Assembly: GCA_002269645.1 (NCBI GenBank)
Contig: NIVC01001950.1
Location: 62,001-126,000, forward strand
Reading direction: 5' to 3'
DNA length: 64,000 nt
From: Macrostomum lignano
Lineage: Eukaryota
Shown: positions 1 through 52,829 of the stretch, one piece after another
Position numbering within the stretch: position 1 is the stretch's first letter
Layout: every line of letters begins with the position of its first letter
Made by a program: the position numbers and the translations under genes
The notes under the pieces: generated by a model
What the model was told of the DNA's origin: nothing
Databases searched by the model: none
Seen by the model: only the letters and a program-made list of their open reading frames with translations

Positions 1-406
1 TTTGGGCTGGTCTGCAGGGCTGGCCATAGACTGTTGCTACCCAGTTTTGGGCTGGTCAGCAGGGCTGGCTATAGACTGTTGCTACCCAGTTTTGGGCTGG
101 TCAGCAGGGCTGGCCATAGACTGTTGCTACCAGTTTTGGGCTGGTCAGCAGGGCTGGCCATAGACTATTGCTACCCAGTTTTGGGCTGGTCAGCAGGGCT
201 GGCCATAGACTATTGCTACCCAGTTTTGGGCTGGTCAGCAGGGCTGGCCATAGACTATTGCTACCCAGTTTTGGGCTGGTCAGCAGGGCTGGCCATAGAC
301 TATTGCTACCCAGTTTTGGGTTGGTCAGCAGGGCTGGCCATAGACTATTGCTACCCAGTTTTGGGTTGGTCAGCAGGGCTGGCCATAGACTATTGCTACC
401 CAGTTT
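1..406. repeat. ~45-bp minisatellite (TTTGGGCTGGTCAGCAGGGCTGGCCATAGACTATTGCTACCCAGT), ~9 copies, intronic in the ion channel gene
   Basis: Tandem copies visible directly; the ORFs at 34-455 are translations of this repeat. Confidence 0.95.
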
Positions 407-597: not shown

Positions 598-642
598 CTG
601 TTCAAGCCAAACGTTTGTCGTTAGAACCTGGTTGACCTCGTC
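598..642 (-). CDS. Cys-loop ligand-gated ion channel (nAChR-like) shared exon, DEVNQVLTTNVWLEQ; gene continues beyond the left edge
   Basis: 45-bp phase 0/0 exon with tttcag acceptor and gttagc donor; the peptide matches the nAChR DEKNQxLTTNVWLxQ segment. Confidence 0.9.
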
Positions 643-756
643 CTGAAACAGAAAGAAAACAATAATGGATAATATTATTCAGAAGCTTTCAGTTGCTTTC
701 AAGTTAGATAATTAAGGTATAAAAAATCTTGATAAATGACTGCAGGTATGGCAAAC

Positions 757-914
757 CATATCCGTGATGAGGATCAGTGCGAAGCCGAACGTCACCGTAA
801 CCTGATCGGACGCGTTGATCACCGGACGAACGGAGGCGTCATAACGCTGCATCATCGCCTCCATCAGTCTTTGTTCGTCCGGTTTAACCCGACCAGGCCT
901 GGGTTCGAGCGCTC
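757..914 (-). CDS. nAChR-like N-terminal exon B (..KPDEQRLMEAMMQRYDASVRPVINASDQVTVTFGFALILITDM)
   Basis: Read from the minus strand (not in the ORF track). Matches the N-terminal helix, RP motif and beta1 of Cys-loop receptors. Donor ATG/gtttgc is phase 0; tandem cagcag acceptor at 914/917 is phase 1. Confidence 0.8.
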
Positions 915-964
915 CTGCTGGGGTGGTGATTGGTGGGGAATCAGGGAGGATAAACCAAACTCAC

Positions 965-1189
965 CAGCTGAGAGATCTGAACCATGGCTATCTGGAATCG
1001 AACTTCAACAGTTTTGCCAGCATGAATTGTCGGTCTGGATGCCGGATCGTACGAGGACAATATTCGATGCAGAAGTCTTTGTTCGTCAGTCCAAGTGGAC
1101 TGATTGAACGCAGAGCATTCGCTGCATCTGCTGGCTACAAAGACTATGATGGAACAAAGAGTCAAGAGTCCAGTTGGTCTGCCGTGCAT
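965..1189 (-). CDS. nAChR-like first coding exon A with signal peptide (MHGRPTGLLTLCSIIVFVASRCSECSA..DEQRLLHRILSSYDPASRP..VRFQIAMVQISQL)
   Basis: ATG at 1189, hydrophobic signal-like segment, EQRLL/YD/RP motif, CTG/gtgagt phase 0 donor at 964. Confidence 0.85.
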
Positions 1190-2039: not shown

Positions 2040-2645
2040 GTAGTTTTTGTAGTTTGTGAGAGTTTTTGTAGTTTGTGAGAGTTTCTGTAGTTTGTGAGAG
2101 TTTTTGTAGTTTGTGAGAGTTTTTGTAGTTTGCGAGAGTTTCTGTCTAGTTTGTGAGAGTTTCTGTTTAGTTTGTGAGAGTTTCTGTGTAGTTTGTGAGA
2201 GTTTCTGTTTAGTTTGTGAGAGTTTCTGTTTAGTTTGTGAGAGTTTCTGTTTAGTTTGTGAGAGTTTCTGTTTAGTTTGTGAGAGTTTCTGTTTAGTTTG
2301 TGAGAGTTTCTGTTTAGTTTGTGAGAGTTTCTGTGTAGTTTGTGAGAGTTTCTGTCTAGTTTGTGGGAGTTTCTGTCTAGTTTGTGGGAGTTTCTGTTTA
2401 GTTTGTGAGAGTTTCTGTTTAGTTTGTGAGAGTTTCTGTCTAGTTTATGAGAGTTTCTGTCTAGTTTATGAGAGTTTCTGTCTAGTTTGTGAGAGTTTCT
2501 GTTTAGTTTGTGAGAGTTTCTGTTTAGTTTGTGAGAGTTTCTGTTTAGTTTGTGAGAGTGTCTGTTTAGTTTGTGAGAGTTTCTGTTTAGTTTGTGAGAG
2601 TTTCTGTTTAGTTTGTGAGAGTTTCTGTTTAGTTTGTGAGACTTT
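2040..2645. repeat. 21-bp minisatellite (GTTTGTGAGAGTTTCTGTTTA)
   Basis: Direct tandem repeat; explains ORFs 1982-2674 and 2113-2655. Confidence 0.95.
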
Positions 2646-3289
2646 CTGCTGTTAAAAAATCTTTCAAAACGCAATTAGAAACTATTCTAAATTAAAAGTG
2701 GTCAATTTAGTCCCTAGGAAACTGCTCAAAATGTCATTGCTGTGACATCCTAAAAAAGAGTTTTCCCACGAAGTACACGTAACACCGAATCAAATTACCT
2801 TCACTTTAACTAACTTTTGGCTCTCCAGTGCCCCAACAAAACAACTAAGAAAGTTAATCAAGTCAAGCTCACTCAACCCTACCTGAGACTTGAGTAGCTA
2901 CAGTGCCAGAAACCAGAAGCAGACTTGAAGAAGCAGCAAAGATTAAAAGCAGGCTTTTCTTCAACAAGAAGTTGTCGAGTGCTTGAAGAGCCATTCTGAA
3001 CTGCTGTTCAACTCAATTTTCTGTTGATAAAAACCTTGAAGATTTTCAGCCTCTCTGCTTCATCTGCGGTTACCATGGGTGGGGGGAAGTGATCTTATGC
3101 TCTCGAAGGAAGCTGGGAACAGATGGAGCAGCTAAGTTCACTCCCATTGGTTGCCACGGTGCAGAAACTTCGTAAGAATTTTCAGCTAGCAAAGAGGCAA
3201 AAGAGTTCTTGTCTGAGTGTGAATTTAATTTAATTCAGTCTGTTCAGACAGTGATCAAAGCAGCGCTCAAGTCAGTGACATAAGTCTCT

Positions 3290-4405
3290 CATCAGTGACC
3301 TTGAGGCTGAAATCTGTGACCTTAACACTTAAATCAGTGACCTTGGGGATGAAAAAAGTGACCTTGACCCTTAAATCAGTGACCTTGACCCTCAAATCAG
3401 TGACCTTGACCCTCAAATCAGTGACCTTTACCCTCAAATCAGTGACCTTGACCCTCAAATCAGTGACCTTTACCCTCAAATCAGTTGACATTGACCCTCA
3501 AATCAGTGACCTTTACCCTCAAATCAGTGACATTGACCCTCAAATCAGTGACATTTACCCTCAAATCAATGACCTTGTCCCTCAAATCAGTTGACATTGG
3601 CCCTCAAATCAGTGACATTGACCCTCAAATCAGTGACATTGACCCTCAAATCAGTGACATTGACCCTCAAATCAGTTGACATTGGCCCTCAAATCAGTTG
3701 ACATTGACCCTCAAATCAGTTGACATTGACCCTCAAATCAGTGACATTGACCCTCAAATCAGTGACATTGACCCTCAAATCAGTGACATTGACCCTCAAA
3801 TCAGTTGACATTGGCCCTCAAATCAGTGACATTGACCCTCAAATCAGTTGACATTGACCCTCAAATCAGTGACATTGACCCTCAAATCAGTGACATTGAC
3901 CCTCAAATCAGTTGACATTGACCCTCAAATCAGTGACATTGACCCTCAAATCAGTTGACATTGACCCTCAAATCAGTGACATTGACCTTCAAATCAGTGA
4001 CATTTACCCTCAAATCAGTGACATTGGCCCTCAAATCAGTGACATTGGCCCTCAAATCAGTGACATTGACCCTCAAATCAGTGACATTGACCCTCAAATC
4101 AGTGACATTGACCTTCAAATCAGTGACATTTACCCTCAAATCAGTGACCTTGTCCCTCAAATCAGTGTCCTTGACCCTCAAATCAGTGACATTGACCCTC
4201 AAATCAGTGACCTTGTCCCTCAAATCAGTGACATTGACCCTCAAATCAGTGTCATTGACCCTCAAATCAGTGACCTTGTCCCTCAAATCAGTGACCTTGT
4301 CCCTCAAATCAGTGACATTGACCCTCAAATCAGTGTCATTGACCCTCAAATCAGTGAAATGTCCCTCAAATCACTGACCTTAACACTCAAATCAGTGACC
4401 TTGAC
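3290..4405. repeat. 21/22-bp minisatellite (AAATCAGTGACATTGACCCTC), ~50 copies
   Basis: Direct tandem repeat with single-T indel variants. Confidence 0.95.
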
Positions 4406-4821: not shown

Positions 4822-5615
4822 ACTCTCCCTTCTCTCCCTCTCACCTCCTCCCTCTCCCTTCTCTCCTCTCCCGTCTCTCCCTCTCACTTCTCTCCCTCTC
4901 ACCTCCTCCCTCTCCCTTCTCTCCTCTCCCGTCTCTCCCTCTCACCTCCTCCCTCTCCCTTCTCTCGCTCTCCCTTCTCTCCCTCTCACCTCCTCCATCT
5001 CCCTTCTCTCCTCTCCCGTCTCTCCCTCTCACTTCTCTCCCTCTCACCTCCTCCCTCTCCCTTCTCTCCTCTCCCGTCTCTCCCTCTCACCTCCTCCCTC
5101 TCCCTTCTCTCGCTCTCCCTTCTCTCCCTCTCACCTCCTCCATCTCCCTTCTCTCCTCTCCCGTCTCTCCCTCTCCCTTCTCTCCCTATCACCTCCTCCC
5201 TCTCTCTTCTCTCCTCTCCAGTCTCTCCCTCTCACCTCCTCCCTCTCCCTTCTCTCGCTCTCCCTTCTCTCCCTCTCACCTCCTCCCTCTCCCTTCTCTC
5301 CTCTCCAGTCTCTCCCTCTCACCTCCTCCCTCTCCCTTCTCTCCTCTCCCTTCTCTCCCTCTCACTTCTCTCCCTCTCACCTCTTCCCTCTCCCTTCTCT
5401 CCCTCTCACCTCCTCCCTCTCCCTTCTCTCCTCTCCAGTCTCTCCCTCTCACCTCCTCCCTCTCCCTTCTCTCCCTCTCCCTTCTCTCCCTCTCCCTTCT
5501 CTCCCTCTCCCTTCTCTCCCTCTCCCTTCTCTCCCTCTCCCTTCTCTCCCTCTCACCTCCTCCCTCTCCCTTCTCTTCCTCTCCCTTCTCTCCCTCTCCC
5601 TTCTCTCCTCTCCTC

Positions 5616-5702
<87 letters not shown>
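4822..5702. repeat. Polypyrimidine low-complexity tract ending in (CT)n
   Basis: CT-only sequence; pure (CT)n at about 5620-5702. Confidence 0.95.
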
Positions 5703-5704
<2 letters not shown>

Positions 5705-6243
5705 CTTCTCCCGTCCTTACGTTTACTAGCTAAAAATGAACTTATATTTCGGTTGCAAGATCTGCCTGCCAGCCACGCCAAGCCCCCCCCCCACCGCACT
5801 GCATATTTCTATAAAACTGTCTGGGCTACCCGCTATCACACTGCATCTGGCATCCTTGTGTCTGACAGACTCTCAGCCAAGCTCAACTCCGCAGCCCCTT
5901 ACTCGCTGTCTTTTTGTCCTGAGTTGAATAGACAATACTCGTATGCATTCAGTTTAGCCCGTTTTCTGTACAAGTGCTTCTGCACTTACGAGTATAATAT
6001 AGTATATATACTTTTGAATATCGCTAATATTAATTAAAATCCTGAATCGTAATGGGGCACACTGAAGTCCCTTTTTACAAGGCAGCAATATGACTCACCC
6101 TGCGCTACTATATTTAGATTTATTTTATAGCTATCCTTGATGCCAAAAAAATTATTCATCTACTTAACCTAAACACATCGGAGCTATAGGAGCCTGGCTT
6201 GGCAAATTTGAGAACCCTAATTCACTGCAGGGCCCGTGTTTTC

Positions 6244-9200
6244 ATGGCTGCAATTAACGTTGTCAGCTGGCTCCTGATTCTGGGGCTGTTGTCTCACTGT
6301 TCAGCCACAAATATTCGACTCAATACCGATTACAGGCTTGATAACATTCTGATTTTAGTTCAGAATGAAAACTTTGCCTCGGTTGATAACATGAAGGCGC
6401 TTAAAGTGAGTCAGGCTGTTTTCAGAATAAAAAATATTTGTTATCGTATTTTCTATGGTAACTGCCACATACAGACTCTCATCCCATCTCACCTCCACTC
6501 TCACCCCGGTCCCCATCTCACCTCCACTCTCACCGCATTTCTCCTGCACTCTCACCCCATCTCTTCTCTACTCTCACCCAATCTCACCTCCACTCTCACC
6601 CCATCTCTCCTCCACTCTCACCCCATCTCTTCTCTACTCTCACCCCATCTCTACTTCACTCTCACCCAATCTCACCTCCACTCTCACCTAATCTCACATC
6701 CACTCTCACCCCATCTCTCCTTCACTCTCATCCAATCTCACCTCCACTCTCACCTAATCTCACATCCACTCTCACCCCATCTCTCCTCCACTCTCACCCA
6801 ATCTCACCTCCATTCTCACCTAATCTCACATCCACTATCACCCAATCTCACCTCCACTCTCACCCCATCTCACCTCCACTCTCACCCCATCTCACCTCCA
6901 CTCTCACCCCATCTCACCTCCACTCTCACCCCAAGTCACCTCCACTCTTACCCCATCTCACCTCCAACCTCACCCCTTCCATCCGCAGGGCTATCTAGCC
7001 TATGTTTCGCACCAGATGGCCCGAGCAACCGAGGCTGTTGGGCGGCGCATTTCCATTAATACTGTCCGCCTGCTGGTTCCGCCAAGTAAAATCGCTGAGC
7101 TAAAGAATGCTGGCGTCTTCCCGTCCATGCCCGCCACCTGGGAATCCGAGGTCTCCGCCGATGTCGTGCTGGAGAATCCTGGTGGAAAAGTGAAGGCAAT
7201 CCCGGCCGATGAGTGCTACGGGCCAAACAAATGGATTAAAATGCCCGAATACACGGTTCGGAGGAACGGTGAGTGACAAGTTCGCGTGTCGCTTCCATGT
7301 GAGAGCTGGAAGGTAGGCGAAATGGGCCTGAGCCCTCTCCAACCTTTCCCTGTCTGTCTGTCTGACTGTCTGTCCCTGTCTCCAACCTCTTCCTGTCTGT
7401 CTGTCTGACTGTCTGTCCCTGTCTCCAACCTCTCCCTGTCTGTCTGTCCCTGTCTCCAACCTCTTCCTGTCTGTCTGTCTGACTGTCTGTCCCTGTCTCC
7501 AACCTCTCCCTGTCTGTCTGTCCCTGTCTCCAACCTCTCCCTGTATGTCTGTCCCCGTCTCCAACCTCTCCCTGTCTGTCTGTCCCTGTCTCCAACCTGT
7601 CCCTGTCTGTCTATCCTTGTCTCCAACCTGTCCCTGTCTGTCTGTCCCTGTCTCCAACCTCTCCCTGTCTGTCTGCCCATGTCTCCAACCTCTCCCTGTC
7701 TGTCTGTCCCTGTCTCCAACCTCTCCCTGTCTGTCTGTCCCTGTCTCCAACCTCTCCCTGTATGTCTGTCCCCGTCTCCAACCTCTCCCTGTCTGTCTGT
7801 CCCTGTCTCCAACCTGTCCCTGTCTGTCTGTCCCTGTCTCCAACCTCTCCCTGTCTGTCTGCCCATGTCTCCAACCTCTCCCTGTCTGTCTGCCCATGTC
7901 TCCAACCTCTCCCTGTCTGTCTGCCCATGTCTCCAACCTCTCCCTGTCTGTCTGCCCATGTCTCCAACCTCTCCCTGTCTGTCTGTCCCTGTCTCCAACC
8001 CCGTCTCTTTCTCAAAAGCAGAGAAAGCAATGCTGTTTACTTTCCTTGATTCATCTATTGATTGAATTCCAGCAACTGCCAATAGTTTTCTCCGCGAGCT
8101 GTCCATCTACCTGTGGGGCCTGCTGTCAGAGTCGGTCAGCGGAGTGCAGTTCTATCAGGATGGTAGCGGCACTTTCCAGCCCTCCGTGTGCAGCTCGAAC
8201 ATGCCAGGGCAGTACAGGTTGCGCAACAGCATCTCCAGCGGTACAGACAGCAGCAGCATCTGTCTCAGCGAGCTGGTACGCCTTGAGAACTTCTCGCTGG
8301 CTAAAATGCAGGAGATCTGCGAGTTCACCCCGAAACCCAGCCCAACGGGAAACAATTGGGGCAGCATACTGAGCCAGCCGGTCAGTCTGTTCTGCGACAG
8401 CAAGTCGTTCAACAACGACACGAGAGTTCACCACAGCAGCCAAGTGCCGAATCCATTCAACAGAGCCTGCGGCGGTCTGTCAGCTGGTGAAGTTCTTCGA
8501 AAGCATCCGCATTTTCTGCCAACCACACCTGGTGCATCGGTGCAAGAAACCCAGCCAACGGTGCTACTCGTGGAAAAGAGCGCATTCAGGGATGTCGTGC
8601 TGGTGCTGGACGTGTCTGGGAGCATGAATGGGGTGAGCTTGTTTGGGCAAAGTATAACGTACCGACATTGACCTTGGCTGCTATGTGACCTTGAGAATCC
8701 ATATGACCCATATGACTCATCATGACTATAGTGACCGATTTTTTAAAATGGTCCACACTGCGAATGACCCATCTCCCATGACCCATATTGCCAATGACCC
8801 ATCTCCCATGACCCATATTGCCAATGACCCATCTCTTATGACCCATATTGCCAATGATCCATCTCCCATGACCCATATTGCCAATGACTCATCTTTCATG
8901 ACCCACATTGTAAATGACCAATATCCTATGACACACATTGCGAATGACCCAAATTGCGAATGACACAAAATGCGAATGACACAAAATGCGAATGACACAA
9001 AATGCGAATGACACAAAATGCGAATGACACAAAATGCGAATGACACAAAATGCGAATGACCCATCTCCCATGACCCAAATTGACATGAACCATCTCCAAT
9101 GACCAGCATTTGTAATGACACCATTCTGCAATGACCAGCATTTGGTAAAATTCTGCAAAACAATGCAATGCAACAAAGCTTCATTTCTGTCCCATTTCAG

Positions 9201-12200
9201 GATCGAATAAAGAACGAGATTCGCTCGGCAACCATCTATGTGAAATACTTCTTGGAAACCGGTGCCCGACTTTCAATTGTGAGCTTCAGCGCAACAGCTC
9301 GGGAACTGCAAACGCTGCTGAAGGTCACGGATGACTCAGTGAGAGAGCAGCTGGCCAAGAAAATTCAAAGCTTGGCGGCGGGAGGATCGACAAATATTTC
9401 TGGAGCCATCTACGAGGCGATGTCTGTAAGACCAAATTTTTTGTCGGGATAAGTTCTCTATGGTTCAAATTGGGTCAAATGATGCTGGATTCCCACAATG
9501 TACAAGTTTTGGTAGTTTAGAATGTAGGGAATGCAAGCATTGAAAAGAGTGCAGGGAGTGCAGGGAGTGCAGGGAGTACAGGGAGTGCAGGGAGTGCAGG
9601 GAGTGTAGGGAGTGTAGGGAGTGTAGGGAGTGCAGGGAGTGTAGGGAATGTAGGGAGTGCAGGGAGTACAGGGAGTGTAGGGAGTGTAAGGAATGTAGGG
9701 AGTGCAGGGAGTGCAGGGAGTGTAGGGAGTTCAGGGAGTGTAGGGAGTGCAGGGAGTGTAGGGAGTACAGGGAGTGTAGGGAGTGCAGGGTGTAGGGAAT
9801 GTAGGGAGTGCAGGGAGTGCAGGGAGTGCAGGGAGTCCTGTGGACTGCAGCAGTGCGAATGTCGTGAAGTGCCTGAGGACAACACTGACCAGAAGAGTCG
9901 CACCCGACCTACTCCGCATCAAAACGCAGATCCTCGGTGCCACCGCTCCGTACACCAAGTCGCAGACTGGTTTCGTAGTTCTGATCACGGACGGCGAGCA
10001 CAACACAGGCCCGAACTTGACTGTTGCTATCGAACAGGCTGCTAAGACCAGCATTGTATTCGACACCATCAGCATCAGCAGATACGCTGACGAGAGAATG
10101 GCCCGTCTAGCTAACCTGACCAACGGGCGCAGTACGTTCGTGTCGGAGAACACTCCCGCGAATGTTGAACTGGAGGTCTCCTTTGCAGATCTGGTGAAGC
10201 GGAGCGTTGGAGGCGGCGAGAATGCCGTTCTGGTGAGTTTTGAGAGACTCAGAAGGATAACGGCCTCTAGTAAGTGACTCAGAAGAACAAAGAGCTCCAT
10301 TAGGTGACTCAAAAAGACAAAGACCTCCATTAGGTGTCTCAAAAAGACAAAGACCTCCATTAGGTGACTCAAAAAGACAAAGACCTCCATTAGGTGACTC
10401 AAAAAGACAAAGACCTTCATTAGGTGACTCAAAAGGACAAAGACCTCCATTAGGTGACTCAGAAGGACAAAGACCTCCATTAGGTGACTCAAAAAGACAA
10501 AGACCTTCATTAGGTGACTCAAAAGGACAAAGAACTCCATTAGGTGACTCAAAAGGACAAAGACCTCCATTAGGTGACTCAGAAGGACAAAGACCTCCAT
10601 TAGGTGACTCAAAAGGACAAAGACCTCCATTAGGCGACTTAAAAAGACAAAGACCTCCATTAGGAGACTCAAAAAGACAAAGACCTCCATTAGGTGACTC
10701 AAAAAGACAAAGACCTCCATTAGGTGACTCAAAAGGACAAAGAGTTAGAATAAGTGACTCAGAATGCTAAAGACATTTTTTCTTCCGACTTTCGCAGCTT
10801 CAAACGTCCGCAATCACATTGCCAACCACAAGCGGCTCCGTGTCAGTGGGGGACACGGACATTCTGTACTTCATGATTTCCCTGCCAGGTACGACTTTGT
10901 CCACGGTGAACTTCACGGCTACCAGTCCTACAGGGACTGTCTATGGCAGGTTCAGTCCCGACCCCGGTGTGTACCAAATCGATACAGCCGTCAACACCAT
11001 AGTGATCAAGATCCCTCCGCATGAAGTTGTGGTAAGTGAAGCTTATAAATTCTCATTACCATAATTATTCGTGAGCTCAGATGAGAATTCTCAAGATTTT
11101 ATATTTTTATAAATGAGCAGCCGGGGACCTGGAACTGGTGGCTGACAGGAGCCAGCACTAGTGGAAGAAGAAAACGGAGTGCCGAGGAACTGGTGAGAAC
11201 TGCCTGTGTCCGGTGTCTAACAGTGCCCGTGTCTAACATTCCCCGTGTCTGACAGTCCCGTGTCTAACAGTCCCGTGTCTAACAGTCCCGTATCTAACAG
11301 TCCCGTGTCTAACAGTCCCGTGTCTAGCAGTCCCGTGTCTAACAGTCCCGTGTCTAACAGTCCCGTATCTAACAGTCCCATCTCTAACAGTCCCGTGTCT
11401 AACAGCCCCGTGTCTAACAGTCCAGTGTCTAACAGTCCCGTATCTAACAGTCCCATCTCTAACAGTCCCGTGTCTAACAGTCCCATCTCTAACAGTCCTG
11501 TGTCTAGCAGTGCCCGTGTCTAACAGTCCCATGTCTAACAGTCCCGTGTCTAACGTCCTGTGTCTAACAGTCCCTTGTCTAACAGTCCCTTGTCTAACAG
11601 TCCCATCTCTAACAGTCCCATCTCTAACAGTCCCCGTCTCTAACAGTCACATGTCTAACAGTCTTCAAAACCACTCCTATCAGCTCCTGATTCGTCGCGC
11701 TCGAAGTACATCATCTGGCAGCCTTATCGTGATTGGTGGAACCGGTAGCGCCAATTCCACCGTGCTGCTGGACACCTGGCTGCGAGTCTCCAGTTTTCCG
11801 CAGGTGAACCAGTTCAGCGTGCAGAAGATCTACGCCTACGTGACCAACAACAGCGCGCCTTTGACGGGCGCCATTCTGGAGGCCATGGTGGCGCCGTCAA
11901 GTGGGTCTCCTTTCACTGTCCAGCTCAAAGATGACGGGCTCGGTGAGTGAAGTTTTTCTGTTCCAGGAAGGGTGATGAAGGGGCTTGAGTTTTCTTCCCC
12001 TATGAGTGTTTGAAACTGGCGCAATCCTTAAAAAGGTGCCGACCTAACGGCCAACGATGGCATTTACGTGGCTCTCGTTCTGCCCGAGAAAATGACCTCG
12101 CAGGGTGACTACGGAGTGACCGTCACGATGACGTCACCCGTAAGTCGCACGTCTACGGCTGGCAAGTTTCGCGTGGAAAATGTGGCCTCAGCGCCAGTGA

Positions 12201-13275
12201 CTCTGCCACCGGGCCGCATCACGGATCTGGCCGTGGAAAGCTCGGTGAAGCATCAGTACGTTCAAGTTCGCTTCACCTCGCCTGGCAACCAGGCCTACCA
12301 AGGAGTTCGTGAGTGAAATTGTACTCGTAACTGAGTTTAAATATGCAGGCTTTCAGGATGTACTTGTGGTGAATTACGGCGGGGTATTACATTGCAGGGA
12401 AGAATTACAAGCGACTTTAGACACTGCGGAATTAGAGGCAAATTTTGACACTGGGGAATTACAGCTGACTTTAGAAACTGGGGGAATTAGGGGCGAAATT
12501 AGACACGGGGGGGAATTAGGGATGACATTAGACACAAGGGGGAATTAGGGGCAACATTAGACACGGGGGGAATTAGGGGCAACATTAGACACAAGGGGGA
12601 ATTAGGGGCAACATTAGACACGGGGGGAATTAGGGGCGACATTAGACACGGGGGGAGTAGGGATGACATTAGATACGGGAATTACAGATGATATTAGACA
12701 CAAGGGGGAATTACAGGTGATATATAGACACAAGGGGAAATTACAGGTGACATTAGACCCGGGGAATTCACATGGGCAAGAGAAATCAAGTGTAGAGTGT
12801 AGCCAAAAGAGACAAAATGCACCCGGACCCCGCAGCGGCAGCCTACGAGATCCGAGCGTCGAACTCATTCGACCAGCTGACAGCAAACTTCTCCTCCTGC
12901 GACCTGGTCGGCCGGATTACCGGCCAGCCGGCCGGTTGGCCACTGCAGTTCGACCTTCGACCGGAGAACCTGACCGCTATTCGCATCAACGTCACCTTCT
13001 TCCTGTCGGCAGTCGCCGTGTCCACCACAGGCGTGTCTGGGGAGCCGTCATTTCCAATGGGCGGCGCCCTGACTTATCCGGCTATTCAAGCTGGAGGCGA
13101 AGAAGTCGTCCAGACTGAGCCGCCGCCAATCAGGACCGACGAGTCGGACAAGACGGATGCGCCGGAGCAGCAGGAGAGCCAGTGGACGCCCGAACTGATC
13201 GCCGGTGTCGCGGTGACAGCCGTTGTCAATGTAGCCGAGTTCGTTGCTATTGTACTGGTGGCTGTCAAATTCTGA
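6244..13275 (+). CDS. CLCA: CLCA-like protein 1 (signal peptide, degenerate CLCA metalloprotease domain, Cys-rich region, VWA, beta-rich region, FN3, C-terminal hydrophobic anchor), ~935 aa, 10 exons
   Basis: Exons 6244-6405, 6989-7268, 8073-8632, 9201-9425, 9930-10232, 10798-11031, 11121-11192, 11684-11942, 12036-12308, 12836-13275. All have GT-AG boundaries and compatible phases (sum 2808 nt). Motifs: WGL.SE..FY, VLDVSGSM, GGSTNI, VLITDGEH, DDGLGADLTANDGIY, PPGRITDL, FTSPG. Confidence 0.9.
6475..6975. repeat. CTCACCCCATCT-type low-complexity minisatellite in CLCA1 intron 1
   Basis: Degenerate tandem repeat visible directly. Confidence 0.85.
7330..8000. repeat. ~32-bp minisatellite (TGTCTCCAACCTCTCCCTGTCTGTCTGTCCC) in CLCA1 intron 2
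   Basis: Direct tandem repeat. Confidence 0.95.
8762..9140. repeat. 30-bp and 18-bp minisatellites (AATGACCCATCTCCCATGACCCATATTGCC; AATGACACAAAATGCG) in CLCA1 intron 3
   Basis: Direct tandem repeats. Confidence 0.9.
9545..9837. repeat. 9-bp minisatellite (GGGAGTGCA/GGGAGTGTA) in CLCA1 intron 4
   Basis: Direct tandem repeat. Confidence 0.95.
10272..10765. repeat. 30-bp minisatellite (TAGGTGACTCAAAAAGACAAAGACCTCCAT) in CLCA1 intron 5
   Basis: Direct tandem repeat. Confidence 0.95.
11212..11662. repeat. 15-bp minisatellite (CTAACAGTCCCGTGT) in CLCA1 intron 7
   Basis: Direct tandem repeat, ~29 copies. Confidence 0.95.
12410..12765. repeat. ~30-bp minisatellite (GGGGAATTAGGGGCAACATTAGACACG) in CLCA1 intron 9
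   Basis: Degenerate tandem repeat. Confidence 0.85.
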
Positions 13276-14775: not shown

Positions 14776-36576
<21,801 letters not shown>

Positions 36577-36840
36577 AATTTATTAAAGCTTAAAAATACG
36601 TGAACCCGAGTTACCCAATGCTAATATATAAAAGCGAAATCATAATTTACACTGAATTTGCATTTCGAATTTACGATACAATTGGAATTTGCAGTAAATA
36701 AAAATTATTAGATCGCATTACTAAAACACGCAGAGATCGCGAATATAAAGTACTTTATGAACTTGTATTTCAGTTCGCAGTGTCATTCCCAGCAGCAATA
36801 AAATGCAAGCCTCTTGGAGAAGGCGCAGGCCAGGCGCCCC

Positions 36841-38670
36841 TCATTGCTTGGCCATCATGGCCATGAACTCCTGGAAGTCAATCTCTCCGTCACCGTTCAT
36901 GTCGGCCTCTTTAATCATCTCTTCCACCTCTTCATCGGTGAGTTTCTCGCCCAGGTTGCACATCACCGCCTTGAGCTCGGCAGGGGAGATGAAGCCGTTG
37001 CCGTCTTTGTCGAACACCTGGCAATTTGATTATATGGATACAGGTTGAGGTGCGAGATCGCCGTGTACTGATTCAATATCGCTTTAGCTTTAGCACCAGG
37101 GGCGCCAGCACCAGGGGCGCCAGCACCAGGGGCGCCAGCACCAGGGGCGCCAGCACCAGGGGCGCCAGCACCAGGGGCGCCAGCACCAGGGGCGCCAGCA
37201 CCAGGGGCGCCAGCACCAGGGGCGCCAGCACCAGGGGCGCCAGCACCAGGGGCGCCAGCACCAGGGGCGCCAGCACCAGGGGCGCCAGCACCAGGGGCGC
37301 CAGCACCAGGGGCGCCAGCACCAGGGGCGCCAGCACCAGGGGCGCCAGCAATATAGTAATGTTTACCATTTTTATAGTTTTCTATAATAATCAGAATGTA
37401 ATTTTTTAACGAGGGCTGCACGAGGGCTGCAGGCGCCTATGGCGCCATCGTTCTACAACCAGCGCTGACTGCAATTCGGCCCATTCTGCTGACTTCTGAT
37501 CACATTCAAGGGCGCCAATACTGTACGCAGGCACAACACTCGTGCACCCGCTCACACAGGGTGTACAACGGCCTTGAGTCGGACGCGTTTACGCTGATCT
37601 GCTTCGCACCATAGGATGCGTGATTTACGCAAATAATGCTTACTGGCACTTCGTACTCATGTCACGTTGAAACTTAATTCTAATTAGATACCCAAGCATC
37701 TCTGCATTACTGCTAGAGTATTGTTACTCTCGCTGTTTACTCAAGAAAATGAGCAATGGAAGATAAAAAACTTTGTATCAATAACTTGTAAAATAATTTT
37801 CATTGTCTTCCTGACTGCCATTTGAGTGTCAGTGAGCCCTGAGTTGAGTGTCAGTAAGCCCTGAGTTGAGTGTCAGTAAGCCCTGAGTTGAGTGTCAGTG
37901 AGCACTACTGATTTTAGTGACAGTGAGCACTACTGATTTGAGTGACAGTGAGCGCTGATTTGAGTGACAGTGAGCACTACTGATTTGAGTGACAGTGAGC
38001 ACTACTGATTTGAGTGACAGTGAGCACTACTGATTTGAGTGACAGTGAGCACTACTGATTTGAGTGACAGTGAGCACTACTGATTTGAGTGACAGTGAGC
38101 ACTACTGATTTGAGTGACAGTGAGCACTACTGATTTGAGTGTCAGTGAGCACTACTGATTGGAGTGTCAGTAAGCCCTGATTTGAGTGTCAGTAAGCCCT
38201 GATTTGAGTGTCAGTAAACCCTGATTTGAGTGTCAGTAAGCGCCGATTTGAGTGTCACTAAGCGCCAGTCATAAGCTCCAATTCAAGTCTCAAAATACCT
38301 AGCCAGTACTCAAACACAGAATTGCAATTTTTCTCACCCTGAACGCCTCTTTGAGCTCCGCCTCCGTGTCCGTATCCTTGATCCTCTTTCCCATGAGGAT
38401 GCAGAACTCCTCAAAATCAATAATCCCATTCCCATCGATGTCGATCTCCCCAATCATGTCCTGCAGCTCGGCCTCCGTGGGATTCTGGCCCAGAGCTCGC
38501 ATCACAGTTCCCAACTCTTGAGTAGTGATGGAGCCAGAGTTGTCTTTGTCAAACAGACCGAACACCTCCTTCATATCGTTCACCTGCTCCTCCGTCATGT
38601 CTTCGATGCCTCGGAATGTGTTCGAATCGCCTGCCGCAGGCGACTCTTCTGCCGCTGCAAAGTCTGGCAT
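36841..38670 (-). CDS. Calmodulin-like protein with four EF-hands, 169 aa, 2 exons (38338-38670, 36841-37017)
   Basis: EF loops [48 protein letters not shown]; GT-AG phase 0 intron; ~20-aa acidic N-terminal extension relative to canonical calmodulin. Confidence 0.95.
37092..37349. repeat. 15-bp perfect minisatellite (GCACCAGGGGCGCCA) in the calmodulin-like intron
   Basis: About 17 homogeneous copies. Confidence 0.95.
37825..38268. repeat. 21/25-bp minisatellite (GAGTGACAGTGAGCACTACTGATTT) in the calmodulin-like intron
   Basis: Direct tandem repeat. Confidence 0.9.
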
Positions 38671-40226: not shown

Positions 40227-41590
40227 TCATGGTAACCTGCCAAAGCAGTGCAGACTGTCGCGTCCTTGGCTACCTGCGGCGACCACGCAGATTCCGTTGG
40301 CTGGCGAGCCGCTGCAGGCCAGGCCGCGCGGTCTCCAGGCTGCGGTCTCCGCAGATTCCGGCTTGATTTGCCCGCCGCTGATTGGCGCGTCAACGAAGGC
40401 GCCCTCCAGGCTGTGCCGCGCCACCCGGTGCGCGCCGGAGTCGCAGAGCAGCACGTGACGTCCAGAGACGTCGAATCTCAGACCGAATGGCTGCTGCGGC
40501 TCGTCCTCGGTGCTGGCGGCCCACAGGAAGGCGAGAAGGTCGCCGCGTGGATTCAGCACTGCGGCTCTGCCGTTCTCAATGTCTGACACGGCTATGAAGC
40601 CGTTGTCATGGCAACAGTCGACGTAGCTGGGTCTTAACGGTCGGTCGCCTTTGCCCAGCTCGATCGTGGCCAAGTGACGTCCTTCAGCGTCGAGTCTGTA
40701 GAGCCTACTGGAGCTCAGGTCGGTGAGCAGCAGGTGGCCCTCCCTGGTGGAGCAGATGTCTGCTGGGGAGCGACAGGCGCCGTCAGGCAGAGGCGGCGCG
40801 CGGCCCAGCGAGTGGCCGAAAACGCTGCGACATTCGATGCGACCGAGGCGCCAGTCGGTGACCCAAAGCGCATGGTTGGTCACCTTGATTGGGAACAGGA
40901 GTGTGGGAGGGCAAAGACAATAATTCAACTACGCGCACAAATTCATACATATTAGGGAATACAGAGGGAATTGCATAGATTTTTAGGCTCACAGGGGGAA
41001 TTGCTGAGATGCCAAGACTTACAAAGGGAATCGCAGAGATGTAAAGGCTTACAGGGAGAATTGCTGAGATGTCAAGGCTTACAGGGGGAATTGCTGAGAT
41101 GTCAAGGCTGAGGTCAGAAGCTGCGACATGTAGTTTATTAAAAAAATTGTTTTTCATTCTTTGTTAGCTACTATATAATAGTTCTAAAACTATAATAAAT
41201 TCCAATTAATGCGTTGTGCATACATATGGAAGGTGCAATGCCCTCGTGGGATGTCTTGTGAAGGTTTGATGTCCTGGGAAGGGACGATGTCCTCAGGGGG
41301 GGGGTATACATAAACTAGTCTCTAATTCAGGTCCGCACTTATATATGTTTCCTGGAAACTGGAAAACTCACCTGACAAACTCCAGCAGGAGAGAAGTCAA
41401 ATCCCAGTCGGACCTGATAGTCCCATTGGGGCAGCCCGGAAGCTGAGAAGTAGACCAGTCGGTGTTCAGCAGCGTCAGGCACCAGCCAGTCAAGTCCTGG
41501 CAAGTCACTGATTGCACAGGCGCTGCGCCAGAGAACCGCCGAGCCAGACGGAGGCTTGTAGGTCCAGCGCCATTGCAGATCGGCCTGCAT
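40227..41590 (-). CDS. NHL-repeat (beta-propeller) protein; exons ~41372-41590 (5' end uncertain) and 40227-40883
   Basis: NHL-like motifs PADICST..LLLTD, PSYVDC..IAVSD, PFGLRFD..VLLCDSGAHRV, PRGLAC; CAG/gtgagt donor at 41371 and caag acceptor at 40884, phase 0. Confidence 0.75.
40945..41110. repeat. 30-bp minisatellite in the NHL gene intron
   Basis: GGGAATTGCTGAGATGTCAAGGCTTACA repeats. Confidence 0.8.
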
Positions 41591-46492: not shown

Positions 46493-47510
46493 TTATTTAT
46501 TAAATAGCTGTGCTAGAAAATTTCGACAACGTGCCGGTTTGGTAACAATCCTTCTGGATCTAGTCGTCTGTGTCGATTGAGGCAAGGAAATGGCGTCAAT
46601 CTGTTCTTGTGGAGCGACAGCTTCCATCGTGGTCTCACTGTCAGGATCCTCGATGGCTTCTACCGGCATACCGGCTTCCCCCCTAACGGGACTGCCTTCA
46701 GCCGGAGCTTGCTCCTCGGTGACATCTTCTGCCGCCTCCTCCAACAGATCGCCATTTTCATCGAACACAGCTCTGCCACTCTGTTTACCGTTCGAAACCT
46801 CGTGCAGATCACCTTCATCGATTACTGCCGCCTCTCCTTCCAAGGGCTCCATCGGCGGTGGTGGCACTGCAACTGGCAGGTCGGGAGTGGCAACTGTGGT
46901 AACCTGCTGGGACTCATCCACAAGCGCTGATGACGCACTTTCTGATACCTGGAGCGGTTGAGTCGCAGCACTTTGATTGGAACCGTTGATGGAGCACGAA
47001 GACAACCAGGTAGACTGGTCGTCTCCTCGCAAGCCTACTCTTGACGACGGCATTCTGGCTGGCGTGCGAGTCCCGTACCTGTCCACAACATCTTCATAAG
47101 GCTGTTTGCGCACACAGCGCTTCATCCGATCGACATTGTACACATTGTGAGACGGGTTGGGAATGCACTCCAAAGGATTTATTCTAGCGAATTCTGGAAT
47201 GAGTCTGTAATTCCTCTCCGAAATGTTTTGCAACACCTTGTATGGTCCAAACCAGACAGCACTGTCGAGGCCACGATGGTCGGCGTTGAGGACCCATACA
47301 AGATCGCCTATCTCGAAGTTAGAGTTCAGCGCGCTGCGGTCATAGTAGCGCTTTTGGCGCTCTTGGGCCTTTCCACGGGCATGGCGCGCAGCCGCTGATA
47401 CCTCAACGAGCGTCTGGTGCAGATAATGTGCATACAGTTCAGGTCTGTACCTATCTTGAACTGGTGGATTATGAACCAGATCCAGTGGCAGATTTAGCTC
47501 GTGTCCAAAA
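46493..47510 (-). CDS. Integrase C-terminal continuation (SH3-like region plus acidic tail) separated by a -1 frameshift
   Basis: Adding one T in the T5 run gives SPAKIFFGHELNLPLDLV, followed by YYDR..F.IGDLVWV..W.GPYKV. Confidence 0.8.
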
Positions 47511-51858: not shown

Positions 51859-51954
51859 CTTATCCCGAATGCCATGGCACAGCCTCGCTCGTAATAAAGG
51901 TTCAGCTTCAGTAGATGAGAGGTCTGCTAACCGGGCATAAGATGCTAACCCATC

Positions 51955-52473
51955 CTAAAACTCGGCAATCGATTCGGTGCTGTTCTGGTGAGCGGCAACT
52001 AGTTCCATATAACTTTTCTCCCTAACGTTAGAGTCAGTGTAACGCGCTCTCATAGACTTCAGTGCCTCTTCACAGGTCTGGTCCGTGAGATTGTTATTTA
52101 GAAAGTACTCCTGGCATTCTGGTGCCAGAAGGGACAGCAGGACTGAAGTCTGTTGAAAGTGAGGAACCCTATGAGCTTCAATGTAGGCATTGAACTGAGC
52201 TTCCCAGGCATCAAACTTCGTGGTGCAAGTGAACAACGGTGGCGGCCGAAGCTTAATGCCTGTAGCTGTTTCCTTCTGTTGACTCTGGTAGAACGATTGA
52301 GAACGGGACTCTCTTGAGAATTGATTTTCTAACAACCGGTGCAGTGCGGCAATGGTACTAGCAAGAAGTGGCTCTGAGTCTGTAGTGTTACTTGACACAA
52401 ACTTTCTTTCCTGAGCAGAAGCGGCTGGATTTGGAGAGCCAGCAGTGGCACCCCTGTCCTCGCGGTCACTCAT
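51955..52473 (-). CDS. gag: gag N-terminal part (interrupted by an in-frame TAG at 51955-51957)
   Basis: LRPPPLFTCTTKFDAWEAQF gag motif; the frame stays open past the TAG into the 47494-51858 ORF. Confidence 0.8.
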   Translation of the reverse strand: MSDREDRGATAGSPNPAASAQERKFVSSNTTDSEPLLASTIAALHRLLENQFSRESRSQSFYQSQQKETATGIKLRPPPLFTCTTKFDAWEAQFNAYIEAHRVPHFQQTSVLLSLLAPECQEYFLNNNLTDQTCEEALKSMRARYTDSNVREKSYMELVAAHQNSTESIAEF

Positions 52474-52829
52474 GATCGGCTCGGCAACGAAGAGAAGGCA
52501 GCAAGAAAGAGAGAGAAAGCGGAAAACGAGAGAAGAACAAAAGCAAAAGCACACAGTGTCTGGCAGGACCTAATGCCCAGCCTAAAGAATCTAAACTAAA
52601 ATCACACAAACCAAATGCTAACCTGCCAGACAAGAGTCCTAAAAGACACACACAGAGGGATTCATACCGGTTTACGAAACGTGATTGCGGGCTTAGCTGG
52701 TATCGTCGCTCGGACAGTCGTAGATGGCCTCTGGCGGATGCAGACTGTGTCTCGGCCGATGTGCAGATCGCTCCGGCCGATGGAGATCGTCTTTGGGCCA
52801 CTTGCAGATAGCAGATCGCCTCAGCTCAC

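What the first reader, a model, noticed from the sequence alone, without database searches (positions are those of the whole stretch)
598..1189. Two tandem, mutually incompatible N-terminal exons in a Cys-loop receptor gene
Seen: exon A (965-1189) and exon B (757-914) both encode the N-terminal helix, RP motif and beta1 strand, and they share the nucleotide string GACGAACAAAGACT. Both end in phase 0 and fit the shared exon 598-642. Joining A to B at the cagcag acceptor shifts the frame. Exon A carries its own ATG and signal peptide; exon B needs a leader exon that I could not locate. Established: this segment shapes subunit assembly and the extracellular surface in nAChRs. Inference: exon duplication yields alternative ectodomain N-termini through alternative first exons or mutually exclusive splicing.
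Basis: partly seen in the sequence, partly recalled or inferred. Interest (0 to 1): 0.7.

Follow-up and report, generated by a model that had tools for sequence, protein, structure and literature searches.

The report
Alternative N-terminal exons, flatworm nicotinic receptor
A nicotinic-receptor-type ion channel gene of the flatworm Macrostomum lignano carries two interchangeable versions of the exon that builds the top of the receptor's outer domain, and the same two-exon switch occurs in snails and a parasitic flatworm, where public gene models wrongly string both versions into one protein.

Summary
On the minus strand, exon A (1189-965) and exon B (914-757) each match Pfam Neur_chan_LBD positions 1-39. 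Both end in phase 0 before the shared 45-nt exon C (642-598).

The window is Macrostomum lignano: UniProt model A0A1I8FH26 reproduces A, B and C exactly.

New findings:
- A strong candidate for the missing leader exon of B lies at 2994-2883. It has an ATG, a signal peptide and a phase-1 donor, and is the only such site in the window.
- A and B differ at saturated synonymous sites but keep 73% identity at second codon positions, so both evolved as coding sequence.
- The same layout occurs in 8 of 8 loci examined (two flatworms, gastropods, unnamed species). Copy 1 has its own ATG, signal peptide and a phase-0 donor. A phase-1 acceptor for copy 2 follows 25-86 nt later.
- In one homologue, two transcripts from one locus show copy 1 joined to exon 3, and leader plus copy 2 joined to exon 3.

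No M. lignano transcripts were available. B's weak donor (GTTTGC) is the main caveat. Models containing both copies look mis-joined. This is a new variant of a known kind, of moderate interest.

The parts
2883..2994 (-). Candidate leader exon for exon B. ATG at 2994-2992, peptide MALQALDNFLLKKSLLLIFAASSSLLLVSGTVATQVS plus one base (phase 1), donor CAG|GTAGGG (GT at 2882-2881).
   Evidence: A scan for an ATG, a hydrophobic stretch and a phase-1 GT donor found one hit in 7 kb upstream. At strict thresholds it is the only hit in the whole window on both strands. The same scan gave 0 hits in about 33 kb of other loci. Sequence read. Joined to B it reads ...QVS(A)GALEPRPGRVKPDEQ in frame. No transcript evidence.
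2050..2648 (.). 21-bp minisatellite (about 29 copies) inside the presumed intron between the leader exon and exons A and B.
   Evidence: Tandem Repeats Finder.
965..1189 (-). Exon A (copy 1). It has its own ATG (1189-1187), a signal peptide, a CxxC and NQS segment, then the N-terminal helix, RP motif and beta1 strand. It ends in phase 0 at donor CTG|GTGAGT (GT at 964-963).
   Evidence: Translation. Pfam LBD positions 1-39. The best PDB match is Alvinella Alpo4 (8bx5), aligned from the signal peptide onward. Donor score 10.5, matching the M. lignano donor motif GT[G/A]AG.
915..964 (-). 50-nt spacer between A's donor and B's acceptor (tandem acceptor cag|cag| at 920-915). It is C/T-rich and has a branch-point-like CTGAT about 23 nt from A's donor.
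   Evidence: Sequence. Homologous spacers are 25-86 nt in seven other loci.
757..914 (-). Exon B (copy 2), the canonical exon-2 equivalent. Phase-1 acceptor, N-terminal helix, RP motif, NAS glycosylation sequon, beta1 strand. It ends in phase 0 at the weak donor ATG|GTTTGC (GT at 756-755).
   Evidence: Translation. Pfam LBD positions 1-39. PDB hits to nAChR beta3, alpha4 and alpha7. Up to 62% identical to copy-2 or single-copy exons of other species. Donor score 2.0.
598..642 (-). Shared 45-nt exon C (DEVNQVLTTNVWLEQ, beta2 strand with the loop-D tryptophan). Acceptor tttctgtttcag|, donor CAG|GTTAGC.
   Evidence: Translation. 14 of 15 residues identical to the homologue L001. Pfam LBD positions 40-55.
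1074..1087 (-). Shared 14-mer GACGAACAAAGACT (DEQRL) in exon A.
   Evidence: Exact match search.
866..879 (-). Shared 14-mer GACGAACAAAGACT (DEQRL) in exon B.
   Evidence: Exact match search.

Best explanation
The window holds the 5' end of a nicotinic-receptor-like (Cys-loop) subunit gene of Macrostomum lignano. The gene has two alternative 5' modules that both splice to the shared 45-nt exon C.

- Module 1 is exon A. It is a self-sufficient first coding exon with its own ATG, signal peptide, N-terminal helix and beta1 strand, and it has only a donor site.
- Module 2 is a separate leader exon (candidate at 2994-2883, signal peptide, phase-1 donor) spliced over A onto exon B. B encodes a different helix and beta1 strand.

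The start of the transcript decides which module is used. A transcript starting just upstream of A has only A's donor, which joins exon C. A transcript starting at the leader treats A as intron, because A has no good acceptor, and joins B.

A and B cannot both end up in a productive mRNA. A ends in phase 0 and B begins in phase 1. B's acceptor and its likely branch point sit only 47-50 nt and about 23 nt from A's donor.

The result is two subunit isoforms. They differ in signal peptide, apical helix, glycosylation site (NQS before the helix in A; NAS after the RP motif in B) and beta1 strand. They are probably expressed from different promoters.

Shown: the anatomy, coding constraint on both exons, conservation of the layout in 8 loci, and both isoforms as transcripts in one homologue. 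Inferred: use of the leader and of B in M. lignano, the two promoters, and any functional difference between the isoforms.
For: - Both exons encode the same LBD segment and both fit exon C.
- Identity between A and B by codon position is 0.41, 0.73 and 0.32. Synonymous sites are saturated (pS 0.75) while pN is 0.44, and permutation gives p = 0.0002. A copy evolving neutrally for that long would have lost the second-position signal.
- B is closer to the family consensus than A: up to 62% against 53% identity to other species' exons.
- The leader candidate is unique.
- The whole-library search returned many proteins with two tandem exon-2-like stretches, from Batillaria, Biomphalaria, Elysia, Plakobranchus, Nucella, Cichlidogyrus and unnamed samples.
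- In all 8 loci examined, copy 1 has an ATG, a signal peptide and a phase-0 GTRAG donor. A phase-1 AG for copy 2 lies 25-86 nt downstream. In 6 of the first 7 loci it was the most pyrimidine-rich AG in the spacer (chance about 0.007), and Cichlidogyrus then fitted too with a 29-nt spacer.
- Transcript evidence in a homologue. Genomic contig L004 has copy 1, then 41 nt, then copy 2. Transcript L001 joins copy 1 to exon 3. Transcript L003 joins a 20-codon leader (phase-1 end, absent from the 750 nt upstream of copy 1) to copy 2 and then exon 3. L001 and L003 are 99.4% identical over 799 nt downstream, including the same retained 97-nt intron.
- In the neighbour-joining tree, copy 1 segments group with copy 1 and copy 2 with copy 2. 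Within-species pairing has bootstrap support of 3% (M. lignano) and 0% (Biomphalaria).
Against: - No M. lignano transcript or junction read was available.
- B's donor (ATG|GTTTGC, score 2.0) departs from the M. lignano motif GT[G/A]AG. Copy 2 has strong donors in the other species.
- The leader is a prediction from sequence features, and signal peptides cannot be confirmed by homology.
- Cross-phylum orthology of the copies rests on 42 residues with weak bootstrap support (42% and 23%).
- The minimal intron length of M. lignano is unknown to me. A 47-50-nt A-to-B intron may be spliceable, but would give a premature stop.
- The species of the homologue with transcript evidence is unknown.
Confidence: 0.7

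Rival explanations
1. Only exon A is used in M. lignano. Exon B is a recently silenced relic of the ancestral switch, still open by chance or recency, and the leader candidate is a coincidence.
For: B's donor GTTTGC is weak (score 2.0) and lacks the species' GT[G/A]AG motif. No transcript data exist for M. lignano. Fifty-three open codons alone are only about 8% unlikely by chance.
Against: B is intact and closer to the family consensus than A. It keeps its phase-1 CAG acceptors with a C-rich tract. Its second-position conservation against saturated third positions argues against long neutral evolution. A unique, well-formed phase-1 leader exon lies upstream. The switch is retained in Cichlidogyrus and in gastropods.
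Confidence: 0.17
2. Both exons are included in one mRNA, as in the database models. The subunit would then have a duplicated N-terminal helix and beta1 segment.
For: UniProt A0A1I8FH26 (M. lignano), KAK7492523 (Batillaria), KAI8777133 (Biomphalaria) and KAL3310613 (Cichlidogyrus) contain both copies. The +5 GT of GTGAGT gives an in-frame join.
Against: That join needs a donor scoring -3.0 and a 46-nt intron in M. lignano, and a 25-nt intron in Cichlidogyrus. Every GTRAGT donor offers this +4 GT, so frame rescue is trivial for a gene predictor. The Biomphalaria model needs a non-GT-AG intron and does not translate from the locus. Many two-copy entries are plain ORF calls reading through the spacer. 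The only transcripts seen carry one copy each. A second, unpaired beta1 strand has no place in the known fold (established pLGIC structure).
Confidence: 0.05
3. Exon A is the unused copy and the gene uses only leader plus B.
For: Leader plus B (phase 1 to phase 0) followed by the 45-nt exon C fits my recollection, not checked here, of the usual nAChR layout of a signal-peptide exon, a phase-1-to-phase-0 exon 2 and a 45-bp exon 3.
Against: A has an intact ATG, a signal peptide and the strongest donor of the locus (10.5). Its whole N-terminus, including the signal peptide and CxxC..N.S segment, aligns with Alvinella Alpo4. Alpo4 came from the A. pompejana proteome data set and was expressed as protein. 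The copy-1 isoform is transcribed in the homologue (L001).
Confidence: 0.05
4. One pre-mRNA from the leader promoter yields both isoforms. Either the leader is cis-spliced to B, or the spliced leader (SL) is trans-spliced onto the AG at 1193-1192 just before A's ATG, and A then joins C.
For: About 30% of M. lignano genes are SL trans-spliced. An AG lies 2 nt before A's ATG.
Against: The site (ATCACAG) does not match the trans-splice motif [T/C]TNCAG, and its last 15 nt are purine-rich. In the homologue, copy 1's 5' UTR is colinear with the genome for 90 nt.
Confidence: 0.05
5. Assembly artefact or collapsed duplication.
For: The M. lignano assembly is repeat-rich and redundant.
Against: A and B are 49% identical in DNA with saturated synonymous sites. 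The same arrangement occurs in independent assemblies of seven other loci.
Confidence: 0.01

Closest known systems
Mutually exclusive tandem exons of insect nAChR alpha6 (exons 3a/3b and 8a/b/c)
   Same: [quoted passage not shown] They are ancient (conserved over about 300 My) and used one at a time (PMC1919356).
   Different: In alpha6 the pair is the 45-nt exon 3, the equivalent of exon C here. Both are internal exons behind one promoter and one signal peptide. Here the pair is the exon-2 equivalent, each copy has its own signal peptide and presumably its own promoter, and copy 1 is a first coding exon.
Variable first exons spliced to constant exons (clustered protocadherins, UGT1A); from my own knowledge
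   Same: Each variable exon carries its own start and only a 5' splice site, so promoter choice fixes exon choice. Downstream variable exons are skipped or lie in the intron.
   Different: Here there are only two modules. The second is a two-exon module (leader plus B) whose acceptor lies immediately behind the first module's donor.
Steric-hindrance mutually exclusive splicing (alpha-tropomyosin exons 2/3); from my own knowledge, mechanism also listed in PMC1919356
   Same: A donor and the next exon's branch point or acceptor are too close to be spliced together. The spacers here are 25-86 nt (29 nt in Cichlidogyrus, 25 nt in L008).
   Different: This was not tested here. Frame incompatibility adds a second safeguard. 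In M. lignano the 47-50-nt spacer may be long enough to splice.
Alvinella pompejana Alpo4 (PDB 8bx5), an orphan invertebrate Cys-loop receptor
   Same: It is the best solved-structure match of the A isoform N-terminus. The alignment runs from the signal peptide through the CxxC..N.S segment, helix and beta1.
   Different: Over the whole protein the M. lignano model is closer to vertebrate alpha4, alpha3 and alpha7 than to Alpo4. Alpo4 has no known agonist. Whether Alvinella has a second exon copy is unknown.
Human CHRFAM7A (dup-alpha7); from my own knowledge, name seen in PDB entry 9qto
   Same: It is a nicotinic subunit with an alternative N-terminal region replacing the first exons.
   Different: It is a separate, recent fusion gene that lacks the normal N-terminal LBD segment. 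It is not an alternative exon within one gene.

Membership tests
Cys-loop / pentameric ligand-gated ion channel, nicotinic-receptor type | N-terminal ligand-binding domain (Pfam Neur_chan_LBD) | tested here: met
   A+C and B+C each match profile positions 1-55 above the gathering score (47.6 and 48.9 bits against 26). The best PDB matches are nAChR subunits.
Cys-loop / pentameric ligand-gated ion channel, nicotinic-receptor type | Cys-loop (C-x13-C) and four transmembrane helices | tested here: met
   These lie outside the window. UniProt model A0A1I8FH26 (P0002) of the same gene has CKIDITYFPFDDQIC and aligns with alpha4, alpha7 and beta2 through TM1-TM3 and TM4 (E 4e-61). The model has local errors.
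nAChR alpha-type subunit | Vicinal Cys-Cys in loop C (YxCC) | tested here: not met
   P0002 has ...ETVYPISPVPYPD... where the homologue L001/L003 has ...VVYQCCNIPYPD.... This is a non-alpha subunit, if the model is right at that point.
Tandem-duplicated mutually exclusive exons | Adjacent homologous exons encoding the same protein segment | tested here: met
   A and B are 50 nt apart and 16 of 41 residues are identical. Both cover LBD positions 1-39.
Tandem-duplicated mutually exclusive exons | Same splice phases at both ends | tested here: inconclusive
   The 3' ends are both phase 0. B has a phase-1 acceptor. A is a first coding exon with its own ATG. An AG at 1193-1192 would also be phase-1 compatible but has a poor pyrimidine tract.
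Tandem-duplicated mutually exclusive exons | Joint inclusion is non-productive | tested here: met
   A's donor joined to B's acceptor shifts the frame to a TGA. The same holds in L004, where the join reads atg|ttg ccc ttg tga. All 8 loci combine a phase-0 donor with a phase-1 acceptor. Rescue is possible only through a donor scoring -3.0.
Tandem-duplicated mutually exclusive exons | Transcripts carry one or the other exon, never both | not testable with these tools
   No M. lignano transcripts were reachable. The feature is met in the homologous locus (L001 against L003).
Alternative first exons / alternative promoters | Each isoform has its own 5' exon with a start codon | tested here: met
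   A has an ATG and a signal peptide. For B there is a unique candidate leader exon at 2994-2883 with a phase-1 donor. This is a prediction, not transcript evidence.
Alternative first exons / alternative promoters | Two transcription start sites | not testable with these tools
   This needs 5' RACE, CAGE or SL-read mapping in M. lignano. In the homologue, copy 1's 5' UTR is colinear with the genome, and the leader lies more than 750 nt upstream.

The most novel reading that the evidence does not exclude
The A/B pair is the M. lignano copy of an ancient switch of spiralian animals, possibly older than the mollusc-flatworm split, in one lineage of nicotinic-type receptor genes. Promoter choice is hard-wired to the choice between two versions of the receptor's apical helix and beta1 strand. 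The wiring consists of a first exon that has only a donor, a sub-minimal 25-86-nt spacer before the second exon's acceptor, and a phase mismatch between them. I did not find this architecture described in the searchable literature, and it is mis-annotated as a double-N-terminus protein in at least six public gene models.
Probability: 0.5. Interest if true: 0.6.

Novelty: new variant of a known kind. Interest (0 to 1): 0.5.

Why it matters
- Alternative exons in the ligand-binding domain are a known way for invertebrates to diversify Cys-loop receptors. This case couples the apical helix and beta1 segment to separate signal peptides and probably separate promoters. It appears to have been kept from flatworms to snails, which implies that the two N-termini do different jobs, such as assembly partners, trafficking, glycosylation or cell type.
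- It gives a concrete, testable pair of isoforms in M. lignano, a flatworm model in which transgenesis works.
- It flags a systematic annotation error. Models from M. lignano, Cichlidogyrus, Batillaria, Biomphalaria, Elysia and Plakobranchus contain both copies. This would mislead phylogenies, structure predictions and receptor cloning, including for relatives of parasitic flatworms and for snail hosts, where nicotinic receptors are drug targets.

Tried and rejected
- Word-indexed homologue searches with A+C and B+C gave one hit and none. The exhaustive profile search was needed.
- I looked for an internal phase-1 donor inside exon A that could lend A's signal peptide to B. The only candidates are T|GTTCCA and weak GC sites, so this was rejected.
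- SL trans-splicing onto B's acceptor: the SL ends in ATG, but the frame runs into TGA and there would be no signal peptide, so this was rejected.
- Other Cys-loop exons in the window: none.
- Leader-exon scans upstream of copy 1 in other loci found nothing within 10 kb in Biomphalaria, Batillaria or L007. In Cichlidogyrus there is only a weak candidate (2262-2373 in L009). The known leader of the L003 transcript lies outside contig L004, and so does exon 3.
- Cross-phylum orthology of the copies could not be settled. Bootstrap support on 42 residues is 42% and 23%.
- The species behind L001, L003 and L004 could not be identified. The run accessions are not in the paper library.
- Literature searches for a prior description of this exon pair found none. 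The library is incomplete, so this is not proof of novelty.
- The 14-nt identical string is roughly 2% likely given identical residues (my estimate). No complementary partner or repeat explains it, and it is left as a minor oddity.
Full report
**What is in the window**

The feature lies on the minus strand.
- Exon A (1189-965) opens with an ATG. It encodes a signal-peptide-like stretch (MHGRPTGLLTLCSIIVFVASR), a CSECSAFNQSTW segment, and then TDEQRLLHRILSSYDPASRPTIHAGKTVEVRFQIAMVQISQL. It ends at the donor CTG|GTGAGT.
- Fifty nucleotides downstream, after ccccagcag, exon B (914-757) encodes (G)ALEPRPGRVKPDEQRLMEAMMQRYDASVRPVINASDQVTVTFGFALILITDM. It ends at ATG|GTTTGC.
- After a further 114 nt comes exon C (642-598), DEVNQVLTTNVWLEQ.

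A alone and B alone each match Pfam Neur_chan_LBD profile positions 1-39, and C continues to position 55. PDB searches return nicotinic receptor subunits for both.

The 14-mer GACGAACAAAGACT occurs only at 1087-1074 and 879-866. The window contains no other Cys-loop exon. The gene continues beyond position 1, past a 45-bp tandem array.

**Organism and existing annotation**

An exhaustive profile search returned P0002, which is UniProt A0A1I8FH26 from Macrostomum lignano. It reproduces A (from Cys22), B and C exactly, so the window is M. lignano. This fits its load of minisatellites and LTR elements.

That automated model contains both A and B in frame (..ISQL-VR-ALEPRPG..). It achieves this by using the second GT of GTGAGT as donor (TGA|GTTTGG) with a 46-nt intron. 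That donor scores -3.0 on a simple donor matrix, against 10.5 for GTGAGT.

The model is faulty elsewhere too:
- a 10-residue insertion after exon C;
- a missing beta-strand block;
- a frame-shifted TM1-TM2 stretch.

Over its whole length the model is a nicotinic-type subunit, closest to vertebrate alpha4, alpha3 and alpha7. It has a Cys-loop but no loop-C Cys-Cys pair, so it is a non-alpha subunit.

**Are both exons real coding sequence?**

A and B are 49% identical in DNA, which rules out an assembly duplicate. Identity by codon position is 0.41, 0.73 and 0.32. Synonymous differences are saturated (pS 0.75) while pN is 0.44, and the excess of second-position over third-position identity has a permutation p of 0.0002.

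If either copy had drifted neutrally over the time needed to saturate third positions, second positions would be randomised as well. Both copies have therefore been under protein-coding constraint for most of their separate history. B is in fact closer to the family consensus than A: up to 62% against 53% identity to exons of other species.

**The missing leader exon**

B starts in phase 1 and so needs an upstream exon that supplies a start codon, a signal peptide and one base. No usable phase-1 donor exists inside A.

I scanned the upstream region on the minus strand for an ATG, a hydrophobic stretch and a phase-1 GT donor. There was one hit, at 2994-2883. It encodes MALQALDNFLLKKSLLLIFAASSSLLLVSGTVATQVS plus G, with donor CAG|GTAGGG (score 8.8) and start context agaATGg.
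- At strict thresholds it is the only such site on either strand of the 64-kb window.
- The same scan gave no hit in about 33 kb of other loci.

Joined to B it reads ...TQVS(A)GALEPRPGRVKPDEQ..., a normal signal peptide followed by a mature N-terminus. This is a prediction, and I have no transcript for it.

**The same arrangement elsewhere**

The top hits of the profile search carry two exon-2-like stretches in tandem. A second search added more. The named sources are:
- gastropods: Batillaria attramentaria, Biomphalaria glabrata, Elysia marginata, Plakobranchus ocellatus and Nucella lapillus;
- the monogenean flatworm Cichlidogyrus casuarinus;
- several entries from unnamed sequencing runs.

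I fetched the DNA of seven of these loci. With the window this makes 8 loci, and all 8 share one layout:
- copy 1 begins with its own ATG and signal peptide and ends in phase 0 at a GTRAG donor;
- copy 2 also ends in phase 0 at a GT donor;
- a phase-1 AG for copy 2 lies only 25-86 nt behind copy 1's donor.

| Locus | Spacer from copy 1 donor to copy 2 acceptor (nt) |
|---|---|
| M. lignano (window) | 47 or 50 |
| Cichlidogyrus (L009) | 29 |
| Biomphalaria (L002) | 56 |
| Batillaria (L005) | 86 |
| L007 | 76 |
| L008 | 25 |
| L006 | 40 |
| L004 | 41 |

 In 6 of the first 7 loci analysed, the most pyrimidine-rich AG in the spacer is the phase-1 one. By chance this would happen with a probability of about 0.007. 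Batillaria was the ambiguous one. Cichlidogyrus was then added and fits.

Copy 1 usually starts TDE.. and copy 2 PDE.., as in M. lignano. In a neighbour-joining tree of the 42-residue segments, copy 1 groups with copy 1 and copy 2 with copy 2. M. lignano A pairs with Cichlidogyrus copy 1, and B with its copy 2.

Bootstrap support for those flatworm pairs is weak (42% and 23%). Pairing of the two copies within one species is nonetheless rejected, at 3% for M. lignano and 0% for Biomphalaria. The duplication is therefore old. It clearly predates the gastropod radiation, probably predates the split between macrostomid and parasitic flatworms, and may predate the mollusc-flatworm split.

**Direct transcript evidence in a homologue**

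Genomic contig L004 carries copy 1 (ATG at 840, end at 1025, donor GTAAGA). A 41-nt spacer ending tttgtttcag follows, and then copy 2 (1067-1212, donor GTAAGT).

- Assembled transcript L001 (protein P0001) is colinear with L004 through the 5' UTR and copy 1. It then joins exon 3 directly and skips copy 2.
- Transcript L003 (protein P0165) starts with a different 5' exon encoding MSSVSNLSVMVMYLLMVAQR, ending in phase 1. That exon is not found in the 750 nt upstream of copy 1 in L004. L003 then joins copy 2 exactly at the predicted acceptor, and then the same exon 3.
- Downstream, L001 and L003 are 99.4% identical over 799 nt, including the same retained 97-nt intron. They therefore come from one locus.
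- Splicing copy 1 to copy 2 in this locus would read atg|ttg ccc ttg tga, an immediate stop.

The species is unknown. L004 differs from L001 by 4% over 277 nt, so it may be a divergent haplotype or a sister species.

**Mechanism**

I conclude that the M. lignano gene has two alternative 5' modules that both splice to exon C.
- A transcript that begins just upstream of A has only A's strong donor to offer.
- A transcript that begins at the leader sees A as intron, because A has no good acceptor. The AG at 1193-1192 has a purine-rich tract.
- The leader's donor then joins B's CAG acceptor.

Two things make productive co-inclusion impossible:
- the phases do not match (phase 0 donor, phase 1 acceptor);
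- the spacer is short. B's acceptor is 47-50 nt from A's donor, and a branch-point-like CTGAT is about 23 nt from it.

At 25-41 nt in four of the other loci, the spacer is shorter than any spliceosomal intron I would expect to be removed. The steric part of this argument is inference from established work on other mutually exclusive exons. The minimal intron length of M. lignano is not known to me.

The two isoforms differ in four respects:
- signal peptide;
- apical alpha-helix;
- N-glycosylation site (A has NQS before the helix and has lost the otherwise conserved NAS; B keeps NAS);
- beta1 strand.

In solved nicotinic receptors these parts form the top of the extracellular domain and part of the subunit interface. 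I did not test what the difference does.

**Caveats and rivals**

The main weakness is B's donor, ATG|GTTTGC (score 2.0). It departs from the M. lignano donor motif GT[G/A]AG, whereas copy 2 has strong donors in the other species. B could therefore be a recently silenced relic in this species; I give that about 0.17.

Co-inclusion of both exons, as in the database models, is unlikely.
- It needs a very poor donor and introns of 46 nt (M. lignano) or 25 nt (Cichlidogyrus).
- Every GTRAGT donor offers that +4 GT, so the frame rescue is a predictor's artefact.
- The Biomphalaria model does not even translate from its locus.
- Many two-copy entries are simple ORF calls reading through the spacer.

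SL trans-splicing onto B fails on frame. Onto A it is possible but unsupported by the motif.

**Comparison with what is known, and novelty**

Mutually exclusive tandem exons in the ligand-binding domain are well known in insect nAChR alpha6 (exons 3 and 8; PMC1919356). From my own knowledge they also occur in RDL, GluCl and the glycine receptor alpha2 subunit.

The present case differs in three ways:
- which exon is duplicated (the exon-2 equivalent rather than the 45-nt exon);
- the coupling of each copy to its own signal peptide and probably its own promoter;
- the very short conserved spacer.

The main survey of lophotrochozoan nAChR genes does not mention alternative splicing or isoforms (PMC6896357). 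My other searches found no description of this exon pair. The library is incomplete, so this is not proof. I rate the finding as a new variant of a known kind, with interest 0.5. It is a tidy, conserved and testable isoform switch, and it exposes a recurring annotation error. It is not a new principle.

Noticed in passing
window 866-879 and 1074-1087: The 14 nt encoding DEQRL are identical in A and B, including four synonymous positions. Third positions elsewhere in the two exons are at random identity (25%). My rough estimate of the chance, given identical residues, is about 2%. It could be a short gene-conversion tract, a splicing enhancer or coincidence. GACGAACAA is also shared by the homologue L001/L004.
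   Followed up: partly
window 960-955 and 756-751: The sequence after A's GTGA is GTTTGG, and B's donor is GTTTGC. If the GTGA is removed, A would end in the same unusual GTTTG donor as B. Either a 4-nt insertion created A's strong donor, or the match is coincidence.
   Followed up: no
window 915-920: B's acceptor is a tandem CAGCAG (NAGNAG) site. Use of either AG keeps the frame and would add or drop one residue (..VS-A-GALE.. against ..VS-GALE..).
   Followed up: no
beyond window position 1 (UniProt A0A1I8FH26 = P0002): The public model of this gene reads ACGSPYSACWDSGCHPTRGRRSPWVSQCW where relatives have CLWLTILSLLGFWLPPDSGEKITLGITVL. Part of it back-translates to GEKITLG in another frame. 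This means either two compensating indels in the assembly or wrong splice sites. The model also has a 10-residue insertion after exon C and lacks a beta-strand block.
   Followed up: partly
L002 (Biomphalaria), L005 (Batillaria), L009 (Cichlidogyrus); Elysia and Plakobranchus entries P0159 and P0015: GenBank and UniProt gene models of the homologous genes contain both exon copies in one protein. They do so through implausible introns (25 nt in Cichlidogyrus, non-GT-AG in Biomphalaria, a purine-rich phase-0 AG in Batillaria). This is probably a systematic mis-annotation of the switch.
   Followed up: partly
window 1-406, 2050-2648, 3266-4405, 4823-5710, 6475-8000, 8759-9144, 9547-9836, 10246-10743, 11208-11663: Dense minisatellite arrays with periods of 9-145 bp fill the intergenic and intronic space. 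This fits the reported 15% simple and tandem repeat content of the M. lignano genome.
   Followed up: partly
window about 6199-13275 (+), and again about 16550-19415 (+) and 31680-36580 (+): ORF fragments look like tandem copies of a secreted, VWA-containing, CLCA-like gene ([20 protein letters not shown], a C-terminal TM segment). Their introns are full of minisatellites. The first copy is head-to-head with the receptor gene. This is by eye only; two fragments gave no Pfam hit.
   Followed up: partly
window 33127-34932 (+): An ORF with two C-type lectin domains followed by about 20 copies of a TSAPDGGV repeat (Pfam Lectin_C).
   Followed up: partly
window 46493-52554 (-): A Ty3/gypsy-type LTR retrotransposon with a 1454-aa pol ORF (protease, RT, RNase H, integrase, zinc knuckle), plus flanking gag-like and integrase-tail ORFs. 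A second, broken gag-pol fragment lies at 19381-20696 (-).
   Followed up: partly
window 22560-27335 (-) and 57384-60096 (-): An AT-rich 893-aa ORF has a weak Transposase_21 (tnp2) hit, next to a 562-aa ORF with no hit. Elsewhere a group of ORFs includes a PHD finger. These are probably DNA-transposon remnants.
   Followed up: partly
window 38299-38670 (-) and 40227-40928 (-): A calmodulin-like EF-hand exon and an NHL-repeat ORF. These are neighbouring genes unrelated to the finding.
   Followed up: partly
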